Assembly (NCBI GenBank): GCA_000708835.1
Contig: DF236980.1
Span: 271,441 to 335,440, forward strand
Direction: 5' to 3'
Length of the DNA stretch: 64,000 nucleotides
Source: Klebsormidium nitens
Lineage: Eukaryota; Plantae; Klebsormidiophyceae
Part shown: positions 2,346 to 11,490 of the stretch, piece by piece
Layout: every line of letters begins with the position of its first letter
How positions within the stretch are numbered: position 1 is the first letter of the stretch
Translations under genes and position numbers: made by a program
Notes under the pieces: model-generated
Told to the model about the DNA's origin: nothing
Databases searched by the model: none
The model's input: only the letters and a program-made list of their open reading frames with translations

Positions 2346-3004
2346 GACTTTGTCCAAGAAATTCTAAGAAGACTGTTAGGCCGACCGACTCAATTCACGA
2401 AGTTTTAGTTGAAGGATTGCTTGCCACACAATGTTCATATGTGACCGCCCTATCAGGCTGCTCGAAAGAAGATCGCTCACCGCCAACTTTTTTGACCATG
2501 TGGCTGACATCAGTGCAATCATTGTCTGCACGCGAGGAGAACCAAGAACATAGGTATGCACCACTGCAGCGAAAGTGGATGCAGGCACGCTTTTGGAAGT
2601 CATAGCTTATGTCTTACAAGCGTGGGGAGGCCAGTAGTTTGAACCATCGACGCAAAGAAAGGTGACAGCAGCACGATCGAACGGTTTGCCGGCTGTTTTC
2701 AGAGGGGTCCCTCAAGAGAGTCTTATACGCTATTCGCCGAGTGCACCTGTTGCAAATTAATGCTCTGATCGACAGTGAAGAAGGAGATCCAGCTGATCAG
2801 GGGGTCGATCTGCGCTTTCCCCCTAGCTCATCTTCCCTCTCATTTTGGCTCATGGTCTTTCCAAGACTCTGTGGAGAAGAACAAGGCATAGATAACCCAC
2901 CCTAGAGCGCTAGCTGGCGGCAAAACATCTGTCCCGCGGATGCAGCATATGAACCTGGCCAATTTCAACCAGCCCACTTCAGCAATCATTTCTTGATCAC
3001 AGCC

Positions 3005-4495
3005 ATGGTTCCTGCACCCAATGCAGACGACTCCCTCGACCCTCTGCTGCTAACCGAGGGCGGCAAGGCTCCTCTTGCACACATCCCCCCCAGACTTTCC
3101 CAACAGGAGACGCGCAATGCTGAGGTTGACATCATCTCGAATGCAGAAGATCCATTGCTAGGCAAGGCCCAGAGCTCTTCTCTTGGTTTTACAAAGCTAG
3201 ATCTTCTCGAAGCGATCGACGGCCGGGCACTGGCGGGTGCGGGCACCGCAAACCAGCTCCAGACGATCTTCAACATCATCAACCTATACATGGGCATCGG
3301 AGTCTTTGTCATCGGGCACGCATTTGCTTTAGGCGGCTGGGCGACCCTCCTATTTCTCTTCCTCTTCAGCGCCGTCTTCTGCTTCAGCGCTCAGCTCCTG
3401 TGCGCGTCCTTTGAGAAGTTGCCCGGGGAAACCGCACCTAGTTACCCAGCCTTGGGTTTCCTGGCGGGCGGTGCGGTGGGGCAGTGGGGGGTATTTCTGG
3501 TCTCCGTCACGGAGTTCTTCGGCGACACCTGTATTCTGCTGTTATCCATTTGGCAGTCCTTGATTGTGCTCTTTCCCCCAAGCGGGGGAGTGTGCCTGGG
3601 GCTCGTGTGTTTAGATCCTAGGCAGTCCGTGATTCTAGCCACTTTGGTGGCGCTACTCCCGGCAATCTGGCTCCGGGGTTTCTCAAAGCTGACAGTGATA
3701 GCAGTGTCTGGGGTAGTGTCCAGTCTCGTGCTGACAGCTGTCATGGTGGGCACTGTCGTGATTGACCCAACATCAGCGCACGTGAGTGGGGAGGGATCAC
3801 ACCAGCACACGTTCCTCAGGGCCCCATCACTGCCAACCGGAATTGGTGTGATGCTCGTGTCGCTCTCAGGCCACCAGTCGCTGCCCTCTTTGAAGAGAAG
3901 TATGAGGCGCCCGCAGCATTTTGGGAGGTGTTTGTACGTTGCTTTTGGATCCATGTTTTTGTTGTACGCTGTAATGGGGAGCCTTTCCTACCAGTACTTT
4001 GGCGAGAGCTGCGACGTTCTGGTGACCCACAATCTCATCAAGTCAAGCGCAATTTCAAAGTGGGTCATCTTGCGGTTCGGCGCTTTTCGAGTTAGGTTAG
4101 CCCAAGTGCTCTCAGCCCTGCTCGCTCTTAGCGCATTCTCAACTACCCCGCCGGTAGTTCTTGTCTTGGGCGACCTGCTAATCGACATGACACAAGGGGG
4201 AGCACAAGGCCACGTGTCATCCTTGTTAGAAAGGGGTCTCCGAACAGCAGTTCTGCTGTTAGCTTATGCAGTTGCTATATTCTTTTATGACGTCTTGGGT
4301 CTACTTTTAAGTTTCATTGGGGGCGTTGCTAGCATGTGCTCTTCGTTGCTGCTACCTAGTCTCTTCTACTACTTGTTGCACCGAAATGAGATGATGCGTA
4401 GGCACCAGATCGTTGTAGGCAGCGTCATTTCTTTAGGAGCCGCAAGTGCAATTCTCATCGGGGTCATCAACGTACAACAACTCAGCAACAATTGA
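3005..4495 (+). CDS. AAAP/Aa_trans-family amino acid transporter (AVT1/vesicular type), single exon
   Basis: Uninterrupted ORF from ATG 3005 to TGA 4495 with ~11 hydrophobic segments. Motifs QTIFNIINLYMGIGV, SYPALG, SLSGHQSLPSLKRSMRRP and SLLLPSLFY. Confidence 0.9.
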   Translation: MVPAPNADDSLDPLLLTEGGKAPLAHIPPRLSQQETRNAEVDIISNAEDPLLGKAQSSSLGFTKLDLLEAIDGRALAGAGTANQLQTIFNIINLYMGIGVFVIGHAFALGGWATLLFLFLFSAVFCFSAQLLCASFEKLPGETAPSYPALGFLAGGAVGQWGVFLVSVTEFFGDTCILLLSIWQSLIVLFPPSGGVCLGLVCLDPRQSVILATLVALLPAIWLRGFSKLTVIAVSGVVSSLVLTAVMVGTVVIDPTSAHVSGEGSHQHTFLRAPSLPTGIGVMLVSLSGHQSLPSLKRSMRRPQHFGRCLYVAFGSMFLLYAVMGSLSYQYFGESCDVLVTHNLIKSSAISKWVILRFGAFRVRLAQVLSALLALSAFSTTPPVVLVLGDLLIDMTQGGAQGHVSSLLERGLRTAVLLLAYAVAIFFYDVLGLLLSFIGGVASMCSSLLLPSLFYYLLHRNEMMRRHQIVVGSVISLGAASAILIGVINVQQLSNN

Positions 4496-5895: not shown

Positions 5896-6255
5896 TCAAA
5901 TTTCACCAGGACCTTGAAAAACCTGGGAATGTTGAAGTCCTCGACCTCCCAGCTCCCAAAGTATCTCCTTGTTTATCCTTATGAACTTCCTAAAAACTGT
6001 AAGATCAAGCTCCGTCAAAGGGAAGGGATCTCCAATCACATCCAATGGCTCTTCGAGCTTGACACGAAACCAGTTTCCCATCGCTTTCCAATGTTCAAAC
6101 TTATGCACTTTCAGATGTGGATACTTTTCCTGAGAAAGCTCTCCTGTTGTCAGCCAGATGGACATTGGCAGTCCCGTCTCGCTTGGACTCAACCACGTCA
6201 TGCTGAAGGCTTCATCTTAGCTCACAAGATCGCCGAGATAGTAACGGTACATGTC
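5896..6255 (-). pseudogene. DUF4160-related (bacterial/phage MANL.P..TGLP family) domain exon, copy 1, disrupted
   Basis: Reads DEAFSMTWLSPSETGLPMSIWLT..LKV..WFRVKLEEP..VIG..L...DL.VFRKFIRINKEILWE. It has an in-frame TAA at 6219-6217 upstream of DEAFS and a 2-nt deletion near 5950 relative to copy 2. The AG acceptor is at 6257-6256. Confidence 0.7.
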
Positions 6256-6980
6256 CTGGCAACAAGGAAACTAGTCTTTGAGTCACCTTAGGAAGAAGAA
6301 TTTAGTCAGGAGGTTCACTTCAGGATACGTGATACGCGCGGATCGACAATGTCACGGTAATCCGAGCATCCGAGAATCTCTCATTCTGGGTGGAGGGCTA
6401 CTCAATCTGGTAACTTATGACACACTTATTTTGAGATGCCTATAACTGTTTCCAGCGGTCCTCCATCTCCGAGTGTCAGAGAAGAAGCTTTCTGTCGGAC
6501 CTTGTGAAACTTTCAGCCAAGGATTCAGGAAACTTCATCTTTGCCGTCTGGGATTGTGAGCTGGAGCTTGGTTGCAGTTTCAGACGTGCTGCTGGACCTG
6601 TGAGATTCTATCATTGTCATCCAGATTGACCCAGAATGCCAATGCTCATCTTCTTCAGCCACGCCCTTCTTAAGACTCCTTCTTCGCTCATGATTACAGA
6701 GGATTACAGAGGATCTTGTTAAGTCCCTCACAAGATCGAAATCCCGTTTTTATCCAGATCAGATCGTAGTATCCAGACGTTGTTTTGTCGATCGCTCTAA
6801 GGCGCTCGCACACAGATGAAACAAAGAGAGGAACCATCTGCAAGCGAGATTCAGAATCACTGGACGTTGCGGTGAGAGCGCGGATTGGTTACTTCGTCGT
6901 CTGATTTATTCGAAGAAAGGTCGAAGCAGCTCATTTCCCGATCATCTTCTAAACACGCTGTAATCAACAATTGTGTTCAC

Positions 6981-7161
6981 CTTGCAGGAGCATGTTCCGG
7001 TTAGCACGCTACTCCAAGCAGCAACCCCGATTGTCCCCACACTAGCTGTTGGGACTATAATGCCTTGCTTATCTCCTTGGATGGTCGGCAGGCTGAGGCC
7101 AGACTCCATGAGAGCAGAGGCTCCTCTTCGAAGGGTCTCGCACCCAAAGACGCCCCTGCTC
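6981..7161 (-). CDS. Upstream exon of the duplicated DUF4160-like gene, copy 1
   Basis: 181-nt AG/GT-bounded exon with the same length and splice sites as 9853-9673. Peptide SRGVFGCETLRRGASALMESGLSLPTIQGDKQ..AAWSSVLTGTCSCK. Confidence 0.55.
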
Positions 7162-7306
7162 CTACAGACACGTAAAATGGATTTCCTGAAAGGGTGTACT
7201 TGTGTAAGTTTCTCTTCTTTCGTTCGTTGATGGATGGGTGATGGATGCTTGCAGTTTATACGGATCAATGTCAACGTCTGATCGACGGAAGGCGGCTAAG
7301 AATGAA

Positions 7307-7500
7307 TGGTGCATGGTCTCAACTTTCGCCAGCAGCTTTCTTCGAACTATTTTTAGCGGCTTGCAGCATACAGGCTCCTAGTTATGGGAAGAGATGTCAC
7401 TTGGTGCATGGTCTCAACTTTCGCCAGCAGCTTTCTTCGAACTATTTTTAGCGGGTTGCAGCATGCGGGCTCCTAGTTATGGGAAGAAATGTCACTTGGT
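7307..7500. repeat. 95-bp direct tandem duplication (2 copies)
   Basis: ggtgcatggtctcaactttcgccagcagc...gatgtcactt starts at 7308 and at 7403 with only a few mismatches. Confidence 0.95.
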
Positions 7501-7816
7501 GGTATTTTTGGAGAAAAAGGTAGCAATCTTGTCAGCGACCTTGTCACCTGCCCTGATGCAAAGGCTGAATCGCAGCGGCGATGGCAAGGATCCTCTCAGA
7601 TTCAAGTTGGATTCAGACGTTTGGAATCGACTCCAATCCCAGCTTTCAGCTGACTGCGAGCTCCTATTCCAGTGATTCCGGAACCCGATTTCAAATCAAA
7701 CCAGCTTAACAATCAAAAGCACTCAGAAAGCATTCTCCGTGGCGGGGGATTAAGTACACACGTAAGCGCTTACCTGGGAAACATCCCTGCAGTCTGCGCC
7801 CCCGCCAGCTGCATGG

Positions 7817-8024
7817 ACTCCGATAACTCTCGTGTGACCTAAGAGCCGTGTGACCTAAGATAGGCACCCGGGAGACGGGTGGGGTTGGGCGCCTTGGTAT
7901 GGTGGTTAGGGTGGGTTGGGGTGCGGAGCGGTTGATTAATTGGGTTAGGTTTTTAGTTTGAGGTGCCCGGGTTACTCGTATCTTGGGTCACACGCCCGTT
8001 AGGTCACACGAGAGTTACCGGTAT
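7817..8024. mobile_element. MITE with 43-bp TIRs and a 9-bp TSD (Mutator-like)
   Basis: TIRs at 7820-7862 and 7979-8021 are 38/43 identical and each contains gtgtgacc(t/c)aa twice. The direct repeat gctgcatgg flanks the element (7808-7816, 8025-8033). The interior is noncoding and G/T-rich. Confidence 0.85.
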
Positions 8025-8737: not shown

Positions 8738-9097
8738 TCAAATTCCCACTAGCTTATCGAGAAGTTTGGAAACGCAAAACTCCACCTCCCAGAACTCCCA
8801 GAGTAACTCTTTGTTCAGTCTCATGAACTTTCTCACAACTGCGATATCGTCCTCCGTCAAAGGGTGCGGATCTCCGATCACTTCCATGGGCTCTTCGAGC
8901 TTGACACGGAACCAACTTCCCATCTGCGCTCTCCAATCGTAGTTACTTTGCACTTTTAGATGCGCGTACTTTTCCTGACAGTATTTGCTTGTTGTCAGCC
9001 AGATCGTCATCGGCAGTCCCGTACCGTCTCTGGGACTTAGCGACGTCATGCTGAAGGCCTCATCGTCGGTCACGAAGTCAGAAAGAAGGTAACGATA
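8738..9097 (-). CDS. DUF4160-related (bacterial/phage MANL.P..TGLP family) domain exon, copy 2, intact
   Basis: After the AG at 9099-9098 it reads YRYLLSDFVTDDEAFSMTSLSPRDGTGLPMTIWLTTSKYCQEKYAHLKVQ..WFRVKLEEPMEVIGDPHPLTEDDIAVVRKFMRLNKELLWEFWEVEFCVSKLLDKLVGI*. Confidence 0.7.
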   Translation of the reverse strand, partial: YRYLLSDFVTDDEAFSMTSLSPRDGTGLPMTIWLTTSKYCQEKYAHLKVQSNYDWRAQMGSWFRVKLEEPMEVIGDPHPLTEDDIAVVRKFMRLNKELLWEFWEVEFCVSKLLDKLVGI

Positions 9098-9672
9098 CTG
9101 GCAACAAGAAAAATACTGCTTTAGTCACCGCAACAAGAAGTTGAATCTCTAGGAAACTCGAGGAAGGGCAGATCCGAATTCCTTACTTACATATCTAAGT
9201 ATCCACGTCTTCTTCTCCCAAGTAAAGCTGTCACTCAGCAAAACCGTTGGGTTTTCATCCGAGTGTTCGAAAGATTTTCAGATTTGAACCGTGCTTGTCG
9301 GCAGCACTCCCTTCTGCATCTTTCCAGTGTTCTAGAATGAACTTCTTCTTCCAGCTCATTATTTCAATACCCGCCCGTACATTTCTTCCCTCGAATACAC
9401 CACCATTCAGCAAATCTGTCCCTGACAAACAGAGCAAGCCATTTACATAACCCAGATTAGACCATCACATCCAGGAATGATCTATCAGTCTAGTGCTGCC
9501 ACACTGCAAATCTTTCCCACAGGAAGCTGAACCGAACTTTGGGTCCAGATTCACTCTATCTTGGGGTCAAAACGCTTGGATTTTTATCGTTCTGAAGTTA
9601 TCCAAGAGGGTCCAGGAGCAGCTCAATTCCTCAACAACTCGACCTCAATGCATCCAATCGTCTCATCTTCAC

Positions 9673-9853
9673 CTTGCAGGAGCATGTTCCGGTCAGCACG
9701 CTACTCCAGGCAGCAGGCTCTGTTGTTATTCCACTACCTACTGGGCCTACAACGCGCTGCTTGCCCCCTTGGATGGTTGGAAGCCTAGCGCCGGACTCCA
9801 AAAGAGCGGAGGCGCCTCTGTGAAGCGGCTCGCACCCTAAGATGCCCCTGCTC
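9673..9853 (-). CDS. Upstream exon of the duplicated DUF4160-like gene, copy 2
   Basis: 181-nt exon (tgcAG|gagcagg ... tgcaag|GTgaag). About 10 differences from copy 1 are synonymous in this frame. Confidence 0.55.
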
Positions 9854-11490
9854 CTGCAATTGTTGCCCAAAAAGGACCCTAATAAAGTGCACTTGTTTTA
9901 CTTCCTGCTCATGTCGTGTATTGAATTCACTGTCTAGCGAAAGTTGCATGTACTGAAGTATCTGAGAATCAGATTGTGCATCCCACCCGATTTTGCCGGC
10001 AGCTCTTGTGAACTAGCTCTTGACAATCAGCCCCACCAGGCAGGGTCCAAAGAGAGTGTGGTTAGTCATCATGTTGGTGAGTTCCTCTGAACTCTCAAAA
10101 GATACCTTCTCAGAAGTCACTCCTGAGCCGTATGCTGGTTGCAGCCGCAACGGCAAGATGCGGCCTCCAAATCCGCCCTTAACTTCTACACTTCCAGACC
10201 TCAACTGCAAGCTCGTATCTCAATCTCAAAGCAAACCAAGGTGAGCGCATGAAGAAAGCTTTGAGGGACGCTTTCACTGTCAGGGCCGCGAGCTATCGAC
10301 GAGACTCACCTCAAGAAGTTTCCCTGTAGAGTCCGCAAGACTGCCACCGACTGCATGGCGCCAATGCAGCGCTTCTTGGATTGAACTTTCTGACCAACAG
10401 CATGATACCATACTATAATTTATAAATGACTCAGTTACGTCACGGTTTGATCGACGGTGGCTTCGCGGCCGCCCTCCGCGCGTACCGCAGCTGACCGGAG
10501 GGTTTCGAGGTTTACCAGGTTTAGGACGCATGCATAAGTTACTCCAATTGTGCGAGCGTCGGATTCGGCCGCGCGCTGCCGCTCGTGATAAATTACACAT
10601 CTGCATGGCCGCTCATGCAGGTTTTATCTGTGTTCTAGGACCTATCTGTGTCGAGCTCGAGCTGACGTACTGCTTAAACTCGCTCATCTCCTTGAGATCT
10701 GCCGCCTCGGACGTTGATACAAGGAACACACAGAGGCGGCCTGGGTCGATATGGCATGGCGGCATCGCGCGAAGTGAAAAACGGAAGTATGCCGCTGTTT
10801 TGCTGCATGTACTCATGGCCGGGCCCGGCTGTAGCTGCTCAGCATGTTTAAAACACAAACATGTGTGACACGCGGTCAACAGCTCGAGCACATGCCGGGA
10901 CGCGGCGTTCAAACAGTATACGTCCTTAACTAAAGATTCATACTTGCAACACTAATCGTAGAGACGTACCTAGATCACAATGATGCCATGCAGAACATGT
11001 CCAAGATTGACATCCGTATTAGCACGTACATGGCAGGCTGGCCGCGGGATTGGATAAATAATGTAACTGAATGTACCTTTCTACTGAATCCTATCTCCCT
11101 TGATTGACAAATGTCACTTCATTGAAAAGCGGCAAAAGCGTACTCACAAAATGTTCAATGAGATCGTTGATGCTTTCTTTGCATGGCACTCTGGAGTGAA
11201 TGCATGAGGCGGGCCAGGAATACAGGCCGCCGCACGAGTATCCAAACGTGCATCCATTTCAGCCATGGGCGAGAATATTGAACGATACCTGTCTACTGTG
11301 TTACAACAAATGCGGACTGTGATCTGTACTGACCAGCGTTTGGAAGAGGCCGGGCAGCTAGCTACAAAGATTAGACGTATGCACTGCGGCAGTCGGGCAC
11401 CTAATCGGCCCTCATCTGGTCGAGCAGTCTAGGAGAGCGCTCGCGACAAGCCCCTCGTTTCAATCATAGTCGGAATCCTCTACACGCACT

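What the first reader, a model, noticed from the sequence alone, without database searches (positions are those of the whole stretch)
8738..9097. Bacterial/phage DUF4160-related small-protein domain as the last exon of a spliced algal gene
Seen: DDEAFSMTSLSPRDGTGLPMTIW..LKV..VKLEEP.EVIG..L.EDDIAVVRKFMRLNKELLWEFWE, preceded by a canonical AG acceptor. Recalled from memory: a prokaryotic/phage family of ~100-aa proteins has the pattern E.LFEMANL.P..TGLPM.VW.S....H..RIKV....V....P.V.AG.L...D...V..WI.LN...L..YWEG and is related to DUF4160/HicA-like toxin-antitoxin components. Inference: a horizontally acquired prokaryotic toxin-like or RNA-binding domain that gained introns and N-terminal exons in an alga.
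Basis: partly seen in the sequence, partly recalled or inferred. Interest (0 to 1): 0.75.

Follow-up and report, generated by a model that had tools for sequence, protein, structure and literature searches.

The report
Algal gene with phage-type DUF4160-like domain
The last exon of a three-exon nuclear gene of the green alga Klebsormidium nitens encodes a small domain otherwise found in bacteria and phages, a distant branch of the DUF4160 (DhiT) toxin family; the transfer looks old and shared with other green algae, and the function is unknown.

Summary
Window 9097-8738 (-) is the last exon of the annotated K. nitens gene KFL_000310460 (195 aa, three exons, GT-AG introns). Named members are bacterial MAGs, and 21 IMG/VR viral contigs also carry it. 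28 of 95 members match Pfam DUF4160, several above the gathering score; the alga's own sequence does not. No HicA link was found.

The interpretation needs three changes. (1) The nearest relatives are not prokaryotic. They are eukaryote-looking proteins with basic N-terminal extensions, including a multi-copy family in the chlorophyte Trebouxia. A single eukaryotic clade is not rejected (p-AU 0.82), so the transfer looks old. (2) A tandem paralogue 2.5 kb downstream has the same three exons, an in-frame stop and a frameshift. dN/dS between the copies is 0.24, so the domain was under selection. (3) The alga has replaced four of the family's most conserved polar residues. Bacterial members are solitary, with no DUF2442 antitoxin, so toxin activity is doubtful.

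The AlphaFold model is confident (pLDDT 90) and has no match among solved structures. This scan had already met the same family at two other K. nitens loci.

The parts
8738..9097 (-). Exon 3 (last exon) of copy A, KFL_000310460: 119 codons plus TGA (8740-8738). It encodes the whole DUF4160-superfamily domain, roughly residues 9-119 of the exon.
9098..9672 (-). Intron 2 of copy A: 575 nt, GT...AG, phase 0.
   Evidence: Only its last ~40 nt align with copy B.
9673..9853 (-). Exon 2 of copy A (181 nt): the main part of the basic, acid-poor N-terminal leader.
   Evidence: It is 78% nt and 68% aa identical to exon 2 of copy B, with dN/dS 0.44. No Pfam hit.
9854..10309 (-). Intron 1 of copy A: 456 nt, GT...AG, phase 2.
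10310..10356 (-). Exon 1 of copy A: ATG at 10356-10354, 47 nt.
   Evidence: The joined frame equals P0001.
5896..6255 (-). Exon 3' of tandem copy B. It encodes the same domain (about 70% aa identity), with an in-frame TAA at 6219-6217 and a 2-nt deletion near 5952 that removes the near-invariant Trp and the last helix. Probably a pseudogene.
6981..7161 (-). Exon 2' of copy B: 181 nt, same phase as in copy A.
7774..7814 (-). Exon 1' of copy B: ATG at 7814-7812, 41 nt, GT donor.
7817..8024 (.). 208-bp MITE-like insertion with 43-nt terminal inverted repeats. It is flanked by a perfect 9-bp target-site duplication (8033-8025 and 7816-7808) that duplicates the start codon of copy B.

Best explanation
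Shown: window 10356-8738 (-) is a real, intron-bearing nuclear gene of Klebsormidium nitens. Its last exon encodes a complete small alpha/beta domain: four strands followed by three helices. The domain belongs to an unnamed family of about 115-aa proteins found in bacteria and tailed phages. That family is an extended, distant branch of the DUF4160 (DhiT toxin) superfamily.

Inferred for origin: the gene descends from an old prokaryote- or phage-to-eukaryote transfer that predates this species and is probably shared with other green algae. After the transfer it gained two introns and a roughly 75-residue basic leader, then duplicated in tandem. Copy A was kept under purifying selection, while copy B has recently been disabled.

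Inferred for mechanism (about 30% likely): the leader sends the protein to an organelle. The domain no longer has the ancestral toxin-like activity, because four of the family's conserved polar residues (E16, N19, H43 and R46 of the exon numbering) are now S, S, K and H. It would instead act by binding the ancestral, still unknown target. It may do so as a dimer, since at least a dozen relatives carry two domains in one chain.
For: Gene model:
- The three exons translate exactly to P0001 (195 aa), with canonical GT-AG introns.
- Copy B keeps the same exon boundaries and phases. Its exons are 75-78% identical in DNA to copy A, while the introns do not align.

Selection:
- Nei-Gojobori dN/dS between A and B is 0.24 for exon 3 (dS 0.81) and 0.44 for exon 2.
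- Two further Klebsormidium-type proteins are 85% and 77% identical to copy A.

Family and its range:
- Profile searches recover the family.
- 38 loci are in bacterial MAGs and 21 in IMG/VR viral contigs.
- The model matches BFVD phage proteins at TM 0.81, E 4e-7.
- The nearest ESM Atlas clusters are Uroviricota and Bacteria.

DUF4160 link. DhiT is an experimentally shown growth-inhibiting toxin (PMC8198452), and DUF4160 is an effector domain in Menshen (PMC12065111).

Old, shared eukaryotic origin:
- The query falls in a clade of eukaryote-looking sequences in FastTree (SH 81).
- Trebouxia sp. C0004 proteins appear among the profile hits.
- Constraining all 38 eukaryote-looking rows to one clade gives a better likelihood than the free quick search, with p-AU 0.82.
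- The exon's GC content (0.49) lies within the range seen across the window.

Leader: 7 K/R against 3 D/E in 75 residues. Most other eukaryote-like members have similarly basic extensions.

Lost motif. Two-domain relatives.
Against: - No RNA-seq or protein evidence could be reached here, so splicing rests on the annotation and on paralogue conservation.
- The taxonomy of most 'eukaryote-looking' relatives is unknown. Only K. nitens and Trebouxia are named, and that group was defined partly from the sequences themselves.
- The backbone of the tree is unresolved. In the free IQ-TREE search the Klebsormidium, Trebouxia-type and 'core' groups are separate.
- No donor can be named.
- Organelle targeting is inferred from composition only. 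Extensions in ORF-called metagenome proteins may be artefacts.
- The biochemical activity of DUF4160 is unknown, so calling the replaced residues 'catalytic' is a guess.
- hhalign of the family profile against one canonical DUF4160 sequence gave nothing.
Confidence: 0.6

Rival explanations
1. One reading: a separate, fairly direct transfer from a bacterium or phage into the Klebsormidium lineage alone, independent of the other algal copies.
For: - In the free IQ-TREE search the Klebsormidium clade (98*) plus P0153 does not join the 21-row eukaryote-like core or the Trebouxia-type clade.
- It sits on a long stem.
- Only two eukaryotes are named among the hits.
Against: - The tree with all eukaryote-looking rows held together has a higher likelihood (+27.9 lnL, p-AU 0.82).
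- FastTree puts the query inside that group.
- The best non-Klebsormidium hits are eukaryote-like, not bacterial.
- The paralogues have dS 0.8, unalignable introns and host-like composition, all of which indicate age.
Confidence: 0.2
2. The protein is still an active DhiT-like toxin or effector, for example a eukaryotic defence or organelle-control factor, and not a detoxified binder.
For: - It belongs to the DUF4160 superfamily, whose members are a validated toxin (PMC8198452) and a predicted Menshen effector (PMC12065111).
- The family shows rapid turnover: tandem copies, pseudogenes, other loci in this genome and a multi-copy expansion in Trebouxia.
- The fold core and K48, D84, N95 and W103 are kept.
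Against: - Four of the most conserved polar positions are replaced.
- Bacterial and viral members of this branch are solitary. Only 1 of 54 small neighbouring ORFs is a DUF2442, and they sit between housekeeping genes. That is hard to reconcile with an unneutralised toxin.
- No PADLOC match.
Confidence: 0.15
3. The locus is a decaying, functionless remnant, or a passenger of a mobile element, that happens to be annotated as a gene.
For: - Copy B carries a stop and a frameshift.
- A MITE sits at copy B's start codon.
- The earlier notes report damaged copies at other loci.
- The Trebouxia-type sequences look repeat-like, with truncated variants.
Against: - Copy A is intact over 195 codons with canonical splice sites.
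- dN/dS is 0.24 over a dS of 0.8.
- Relatives 85% and 77% identical are also intact.
- The AlphaFold model is confident, with pLDDT 89.7.
Confidence: 0.1
4. Bacterial or phage contamination, or a misassembly, in the algal genome.
For: The domain is otherwise typical of bacteria and phages.
Against: - The contig is 335 kb.
- There are two copies with spliceosomal introns in conserved positions.
- A eukaryotic-type amino-acid transporter ORF lies next door.
- A MITE with a target-site duplication is present.
- The base composition is like the surroundings.
Confidence: 0.01

Closest known systems
DhiT, the toxin of the dhiTA system of Dickeya dadantii 3937 (Pfam DUF4160, PF13711), and the DUF4160 effector domain of Menshen NsnC
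   Same: Same superfamily. Positions 23-65 of the 65-position DUF4160 profile align to the strand-strand-helix part (about residues 62-104) of members of this family. Both are small alpha/beta proteins with no solved structural relative (PMC12065111).
   Different: - The algal sequence itself does not hit PF13711.
- This branch is about 35-40 residues longer: it has an N-terminal segment with the TGLPM motif, an insert after the second strand and a third helix.
- It has no DUF2442 partner.
- It is encoded in a eukaryotic nucleus behind introns and a leader.
- Its toxicity is untested.
Uncharacterised proteins of uncultured tailed phages (BFVD A0A6J5LAD3 and A0A6J5LA28; phrog_14333; IMG/VR loci L039-L059) and of bacterial MAGs (L001-L038)
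   Same: - Same family by profile search.
- Same predicted fold (TM 0.81/0.84, rmsd 2.0 over 114 columns).
- Same motifs: TGLPM-IW, LN and W.
   Different: - These are single-exon genes without a leader.
- They keep the E, N, H and R positions that Klebsormidium has replaced.
- They are 18-35% identical to the algal domain.
Trebouxia sp. C0004 hypothetical proteins WJX77_006762 (KAL0029905.1/KAL0029906.1) and WJX77_003167, and the multi-copy ~116-aa subfamily around them
   Same: These are eukaryotic (green algal) members of the same family, some with N-terminal extensions. A common clade with Klebsormidium is not rejected.
   Different: - About 30-35% identity.
- They keep the HGPRIK motif.
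- They are highly multi-copy and variably truncated, which suggests a repeat or mobile context that was not examined.
Other K. nitens loci noted earlier in this scan (s1-299444 tandem triplet; s1-323183 spliced gene)
   Same: According to those notes: the same domain family, introns, transit-peptide-like leaders, tandem copies and damaged members.
   Different: They lie on different scaffolds.

Membership tests
Pfam DUF4160 (PF13711) / DhiT toxin superfamily | The sequence itself matches the PF13711 profile. | tested here: not met
   no PF13711 hit for the exon translation, even at E<=10.
Pfam DUF4160 (PF13711) / DhiT toxin superfamily | Homology by transitivity: significant relatives of the query match PF13711 over a consistent region. 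| tested here: met
   - a Klebsormidium-only profile finds the family.
- 28 of 95 of those members hit PF13711, best E 1.5e-5.
- seven members score 25.6-29.8 bits (cut-off 23), always with profile positions 23-65 on the C-terminal half.
Pfam DUF4160 (PF13711) / DhiT toxin superfamily | An adjacent DUF2442 (DhiA) antitoxin gene. | tested here: not met
   - Among relatives, 1 of 54 small flanking ORFs is a DUF2442, and that one belongs to a canonical DUF4160 next door in L057.
- The flanks are housekeeping genes.
- In the window the neighbours are the paralogue and an amino-acid transporter. The window's small ORFs were not all scanned with the DUF2442 profile.
Pfam DUF4160 (PF13711) / DhiT toxin superfamily | Growth inhibition on expression that is neutralised by the partner. 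| not testable with these tools
   This needs expression in E. coli. It has been shown only for DhiT (PMC8198452).
Unnamed extended DUF4160-like family (TGLPM-IW ... HGPRIKV ... LN ... W; about 115 aa) | Full-length profile match and the same predicted fold. | tested here: met
   Hits run from E 2e-14 to 1e-3 over profile positions about 3-110. The model has pLDDT 89.7 and matches phage members at TM 0.81.
Unnamed extended DUF4160-like family (TGLPM-IW ... HGPRIKV ... LN ... W; about 115 aa) | The family's conserved residues. | tested here: inconclusive
   Kept: T26, G27, L28, P29, M30, I32, W33, K48, V49, D84, N95, L99, W103. Replaced: E16 to S, N19 to S, H43 to K, P45 to A, R46 to H.
HicA toxin family | A match to HicA profiles. 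| tested here: not met
   No HicA family among the Pfam hits of the query or of the 95 family members.
Gene of horizontal (prokaryote or phage) origin in a eukaryote | Integrated in a eukaryotic chromosome and processed as a eukaryotic gene. | tested here: met
   A 335-kb K. nitens contig, GT-AG introns conserved between two copies, a MITE and a eukaryotic neighbour. There is no direct transcript evidence.
Gene of horizontal (prokaryote or phage) origin in a eukaryote | Eukaryotic sequences nested within prokaryotic or viral diversity, with a patchy eukaryotic distribution. | tested here: inconclusive
   The family is overwhelmingly prokaryotic or viral, and only K. nitens and Trebouxia are named eukaryotes. 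However, the backbone is unresolved, the root is unknown and no donor can be identified.

The most novel reading that the evidence does not exclude
Green algae (streptophyte and chlorophyte) took over a phage or bacterial DhiT-like toxin fold and kept it as a fast-evolving, leader-bearing nuclear gene family. It would work either as an organelle-directed regulator or as a eukaryotic immune effector against bacteria or viruses. The tandem copies, pseudogenes and the Trebouxia expansion would then be marks of an arms race.
Probability: 0.1. Interest if true: 0.8.

Novelty: new variant of a known kind. Interest (0 to 1): 0.5.

Why it matters
DUF4160 is known only as a bacterial toxin (DhiT) and as a predicted effector in an anti-phage system, and its biochemical activity is unsolved. 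I found no paper that mentions it in a eukaryote: the eleven papers in the library that contain the term are all prokaryotic. Two searches that combined toxin-antitoxin and horizontal gene transfer with Klebsormidium or with green algae also found nothing on it.

An intron-bearing, leader-fused and selectively maintained branch in green algae would be a clean case of a prokaryotic or phage toxin fold being domesticated by a eukaryote. It also draws attention to a large, undescribed and partner-less branch of the superfamily in bacteria and phages. That branch offers natural 'motif-lost' variants for working out what the fold does.

The practical weight is modest until a function or a location is shown. 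The same family had already been flagged at two other loci of this genome by this scan.

Tried and rejected
- Direct Pfam, PHROGs, NCBIfam and PADLOC scans of the exon gave no meaningful hit.
- A profile search of PDB sequences gave one chance-level row.
- tblastn of the exon against the deposited phage and plasmid collections gave nothing.
- tblastn against the phage collection gave nothing for a viral member. For a metagenomic member it gave one uncultured 485-kb phage.
- Foldseek against PDB gave nothing at E<=0.001. VIA-align against 48,161 chains gave a best Z of 3.6, which is noise.
- hhalign of the family profile against one canonical DUF4160 sequence found no alignment, so the DUF4160 link rests on the Pfam HMM hits.
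- The search for related loci with the 95-sequence alignment failed because no stretch was conserved enough. A narrower alignment worked.
- The one metagenome scan, meant to fetch DNA of the eukaryote-like relatives, returned only five AT-rich prokaryote- or phage-type loci.
I therefore could not obtain the contigs, taxa or intron positions of P0002, P0003, P0153 and the eukaryote-like core.
- The listing of cluster members added no taxonomy beyond Trebouxia.
- The literature has no hit for the gene identifier, nor for algal toxin-antitoxin transfer of this family.
- Contamination was considered and rejected (see the rival explanations).
I re-ran it by reference.
- No search or fold was run on a joined, spliced sequence. 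Exons were searched singly by reference. The joined frame was only translated in a script to compare it with P0001.

Full report
**What is at the coordinates.** The minus strand of window 9097-8738 reads as 119 codons followed by TGA. The stretch follows a pyrimidine tract and a CAG acceptor. A database search shows it is 100% identical to the C-terminal 119 residues of NCBI protein KFL_000310460 of Klebsormidium nitens, 195 aa, on a 335-kb contig. So the window is from this streptophyte alga.

Reading the DNA gives these parts:
- exon 1: 10356-10310
- intron 1: 10309-9854
- exon 2: 9853-9673
- intron 2: 9672-9098
- exon 3: 9097-8738

Both introns are GT-AG, and the three exons translate to exactly the 195-aa database protein. 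That joined translation was done only in a script, as a frame check. All searches used single exons by reference, and no search or fold was run on a joined sequence.

**The family.** Direct scans of the exon against Pfam, PHROGs, NCBIfam and PADLOC found nothing. The word-indexed protein search found only two close relatives of 111 aa, 85% and 77% identical.

A profile of these three sequences was searched exhaustively against 1.84 billion representatives. It found at least 150 proteins at E<=1e-3, ten of them at E<=1e-10. Two hits (a TPR protein and a repeat protein) are false.

The family's range is as follows:
- The named members are bacterial MAGs.
- A genome scan gave 38 loci, in Alphaproteobacteria (including Stellaceae and Geminicoccaceae), Methylococcaceae, Nitrospirota, SAR324 and Acidimicrobiaceae.
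- An IMG/VR scan gave 21 viral contigs of 6-323 kb.
- The ESM Atlas neighbours are Uroviricota and Bacteria.
- Among deposited phage genomes only one uncultured 485-kb phage has it, and PHROGs barely covers it.

**Relation to DUF4160.** 28 of 95 members hit Pfam PF13711. In seven members checked individually the scores are 25.6-29.8 bits against a cut-off of 23. The alignment is always profile positions 23-65 of 65 onto the strand-strand-helix part of the protein, about residues 62-104. The family is therefore a distant, longer branch of the DUF4160 superfamily.

I also think the N-terminal strands correspond. The family's H-G-P-R-I-K-V segment would match the canonical P-P-H-x-H-V segment seen in L057:3364-3612. 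This correspondence is my inference; no tool showed it, and hhalign against that single canonical sequence found nothing.

What is known about DUF4160:
- It is the toxin DhiT of the dhiTA pair of Dickeya dadantii, with DUF2442 as antitoxin (PMC8198452).
- It is a predicted effector domain of Menshen NsnC, reported to have no structural homologue (PMC12065111).

No HicA relation appeared anywhere.

**Structure.** With the 95-sequence alignment, AlphaFold2 gives a confident model (pLDDT 89.7, pTM 0.83). It has four strands (residues 18-20, 32-34, 46-50 and 62-66) followed by three helices (82-94, 96-105 and 109-115). Foldseek finds no solved structure, and an all-against-representatives search gives a best Z of only 3.6. 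In BFVD the model matches uncharacterised proteins of uncultured tailed phages (E 4e-7, TM 0.81/0.84, rmsd 2.0), which are members of the same family.

**Context in prokaryotes.** The bacterial genes stand alone between housekeeping genes:
- gyrA and enolase (L013)
- sufB and an ABC ATPase (L003)
- a class IV aminotransferase (L016) or a methyltransferase (L018) upstream
- chorismate synthase downstream (L020)

Of 54 small flanking ORFs, only one is a DUF2442 and one a canonical DUF4160. At least the DUF4160 is in viral contig L057, right after the family member. This branch is therefore not a two-gene toxin-antitoxin module. At least twelve proteins carry two copies of the domain in one chain, which suggests that single-domain members act as dimers (inference).

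**A second copy in the window.** tblastn of the exon against the window finds a paralogue at 6249-5950. Reading the DNA shows the same three-exon gene 2.5 kb downstream on the same strand: exon 1' at 7814-7774, exon 2' at 7161-6981 and exon 3' at 6255-5896. It has GT-AG introns in the same positions and phases.

Its exons are 75-78% identical in DNA to copy A. The introns do not align, apart from about 40 nt before exon 3. Copy B has an in-frame TAA at 6219-6217. It also has a 2-nt deletion near 5952 that destroys the near-invariant Trp and the last helix, so it is probably a pseudogene.

Nei-Gojobori dN/dS between the copies is 0.24 for the domain exon (dS 0.81) and 0.44 for exon 2. Both exons therefore evolved under purifying selection for most of their separate history. 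Conserved exons set against unalignable introns also independently support the exon-intron model.

A 208-bp MITE-like element with 43-nt inverted ends and a perfect 9-bp target duplication sits exactly at copy B's start codon.

**Where the algal gene came from.**
- In a FastTree of 259 domains the query groups first with its two close relatives (99), then with P0004/P0153 (96). It then falls in a 27-row clade (81) of proteins that look eukaryotic because they have N-terminal extensions.
- A profile of that group finds two named proteins of the chlorophyte Trebouxia sp. C0004. It also finds a large multi-copy subfamily of about 116 aa on contigs of up to 3 Mb.
- In an IQ-TREE (LG+C20) analysis of 107 rows the backbone is unresolved. 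The eukaryote-looking rows fall into three supported groups: Klebsormidium 98*, a 'core' of 21 rows 97*, and Trebouxia-type 98*.
- Forcing all 38 eukaryote-looking rows into one clade gives a likelihood 27.9 units higher than the free quick search, with p-AU 0.82. A single eukaryotic origin is therefore allowed, though not proven.

Caveats: only K. nitens and Trebouxia carry names. The group was defined partly from sequence features. The root and the donor are unknown.

The exon's GC content (0.49) is ordinary for the window. The neighbouring long ORF is a eukaryotic-type amino-acid transporter. Contamination is excluded for practical purposes.

**What it may do.** The 75 residues ahead of the domain hold 7 K/R, 3 D/E and 14 S/T. 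Most other eukaryote-like members also have basic, acid-poor extensions. This fits an organelle-targeting leader, but it is composition only.

Against the family consensus, the alga keeps the hydrophobic core and T26, G27, L28, P29, M30, I32, W33, K48, V49, D84, N95, L99 and W103. It has replaced E16, N19, H43, P45 and R46 with S, S, K, A and H. Its nearest relative P0153 also lacks the H and R.

My preferred reading, at about 30%, is a detoxified module sent to an organelle that works by binding. The rivals are a still-active toxin-like effector (about 15%) and a decaying remnant (about 10%). The core statement, that this is a real spliced gene with a domain of the prokaryote/phage DUF4160 superfamily acquired by an old transfer, I hold at about 0.6-0.7 overall. 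Gene reality and family membership alone are near 0.9.

**Relation to earlier notes of this scan.** The same family was already reported at two other K. nitens loci: a tandem triplet (s1-299444) and a spliced gene with a damaged front end (s1-323183). Those notes reach a similar conclusion: a distant DUF4160 branch, nearest relatives eukaryotic, and an old transfer. I reached my conclusions from my own searches before reading them. They are not independent evidence, and I could not compare the sequences.

**Verdict.** The finding is a eukaryotic, intron-bearing, leader-fused variant of a known prokaryotic superfamily. Its function is unknown and its interest is moderate.

Noticed in passing
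window 5896-7814 (-): A tandem paralogue (copy B) of the whole three-exon gene. It has an in-frame TAA at 6219-6217 and a 2-nt deletion near 5952. dN/dS against copy A is 0.24 for the domain exon and 0.44 for exon 2.
   Followed up: yes
window 7817-8024, with flanks 8033-8025 and 7816-7808: A 208-bp MITE-like element with 43-nt terminal inverted repeats and a perfect 9-bp target-site duplication (a length typical of Mutator-like elements; from my own knowledge). It is inserted exactly at copy B's start codon. The duplication creates an upstream ATG with a 10-codon ORF.
   Followed up: partly
window 7307-7496: Two tandem copies of a 95-nt unit (96% identical) inside intron 1 of copy B.
   Followed up: no
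window 2993-4495 (+): A 500-codon open frame with a full-length Aa_trans (PF01490) amino-acid transporter domain. It appears to be intron-free over this stretch and is the next gene downstream of copy B.
   Followed up: partly
L057:2911-3612 (IMG/VR contig of 150 kb; L058 is the same): A member of the extended family is followed directly by a canonical DUF4160 gene (3364-3612), and a DUF2442 gene was found among the neighbours scanned. So both branches of the superfamily lie side by side in one viral contig.
   Followed up: partly
L013, L003, L016, L018, L020 (bacterial MAG loci): The bacterial members are single small genes wedged between housekeeping genes: gyrA|X|enolase in L013, sufB|X|ABC ATPase in L003, a class IV aminotransferase (L016) or a methyltransferase (L018) just upstream, and chorismate synthase just downstream (L020). 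This placement is more like a free-standing selfish gene than an operon member.
   Followed up: partly
P0255-P0300, P0276, P0313, P0318 (proteins; Trebouxia sp. C0004 and unnamed sources): A highly multi-copy, closely similar ~116-aa subfamily with many truncated variants, on contigs of up to 3 Mb. It looks like a lineage-specific expansion in a chlorophyte, possibly carried by a repeat.
   Followed up: partly
P0068, P0151, and P0005/P0008/P0009/P0014/P0025/P0093/P0103/P0146: Domain fusions. P0068 carries a C-terminal DUF5678. P0151 has a weak, sub-threshold CBM_20 starch-binding match at its N-terminus. At least twelve proteins hold two copies of the domain in tandem.
   Followed up: partly
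L060, L062, L064 (JGI metagenome contigs, GC 21-38%): AT-rich contigs with two family genes in tandem, so adjacent paralogue pairs also occur outside the algae.
   Followed up: no
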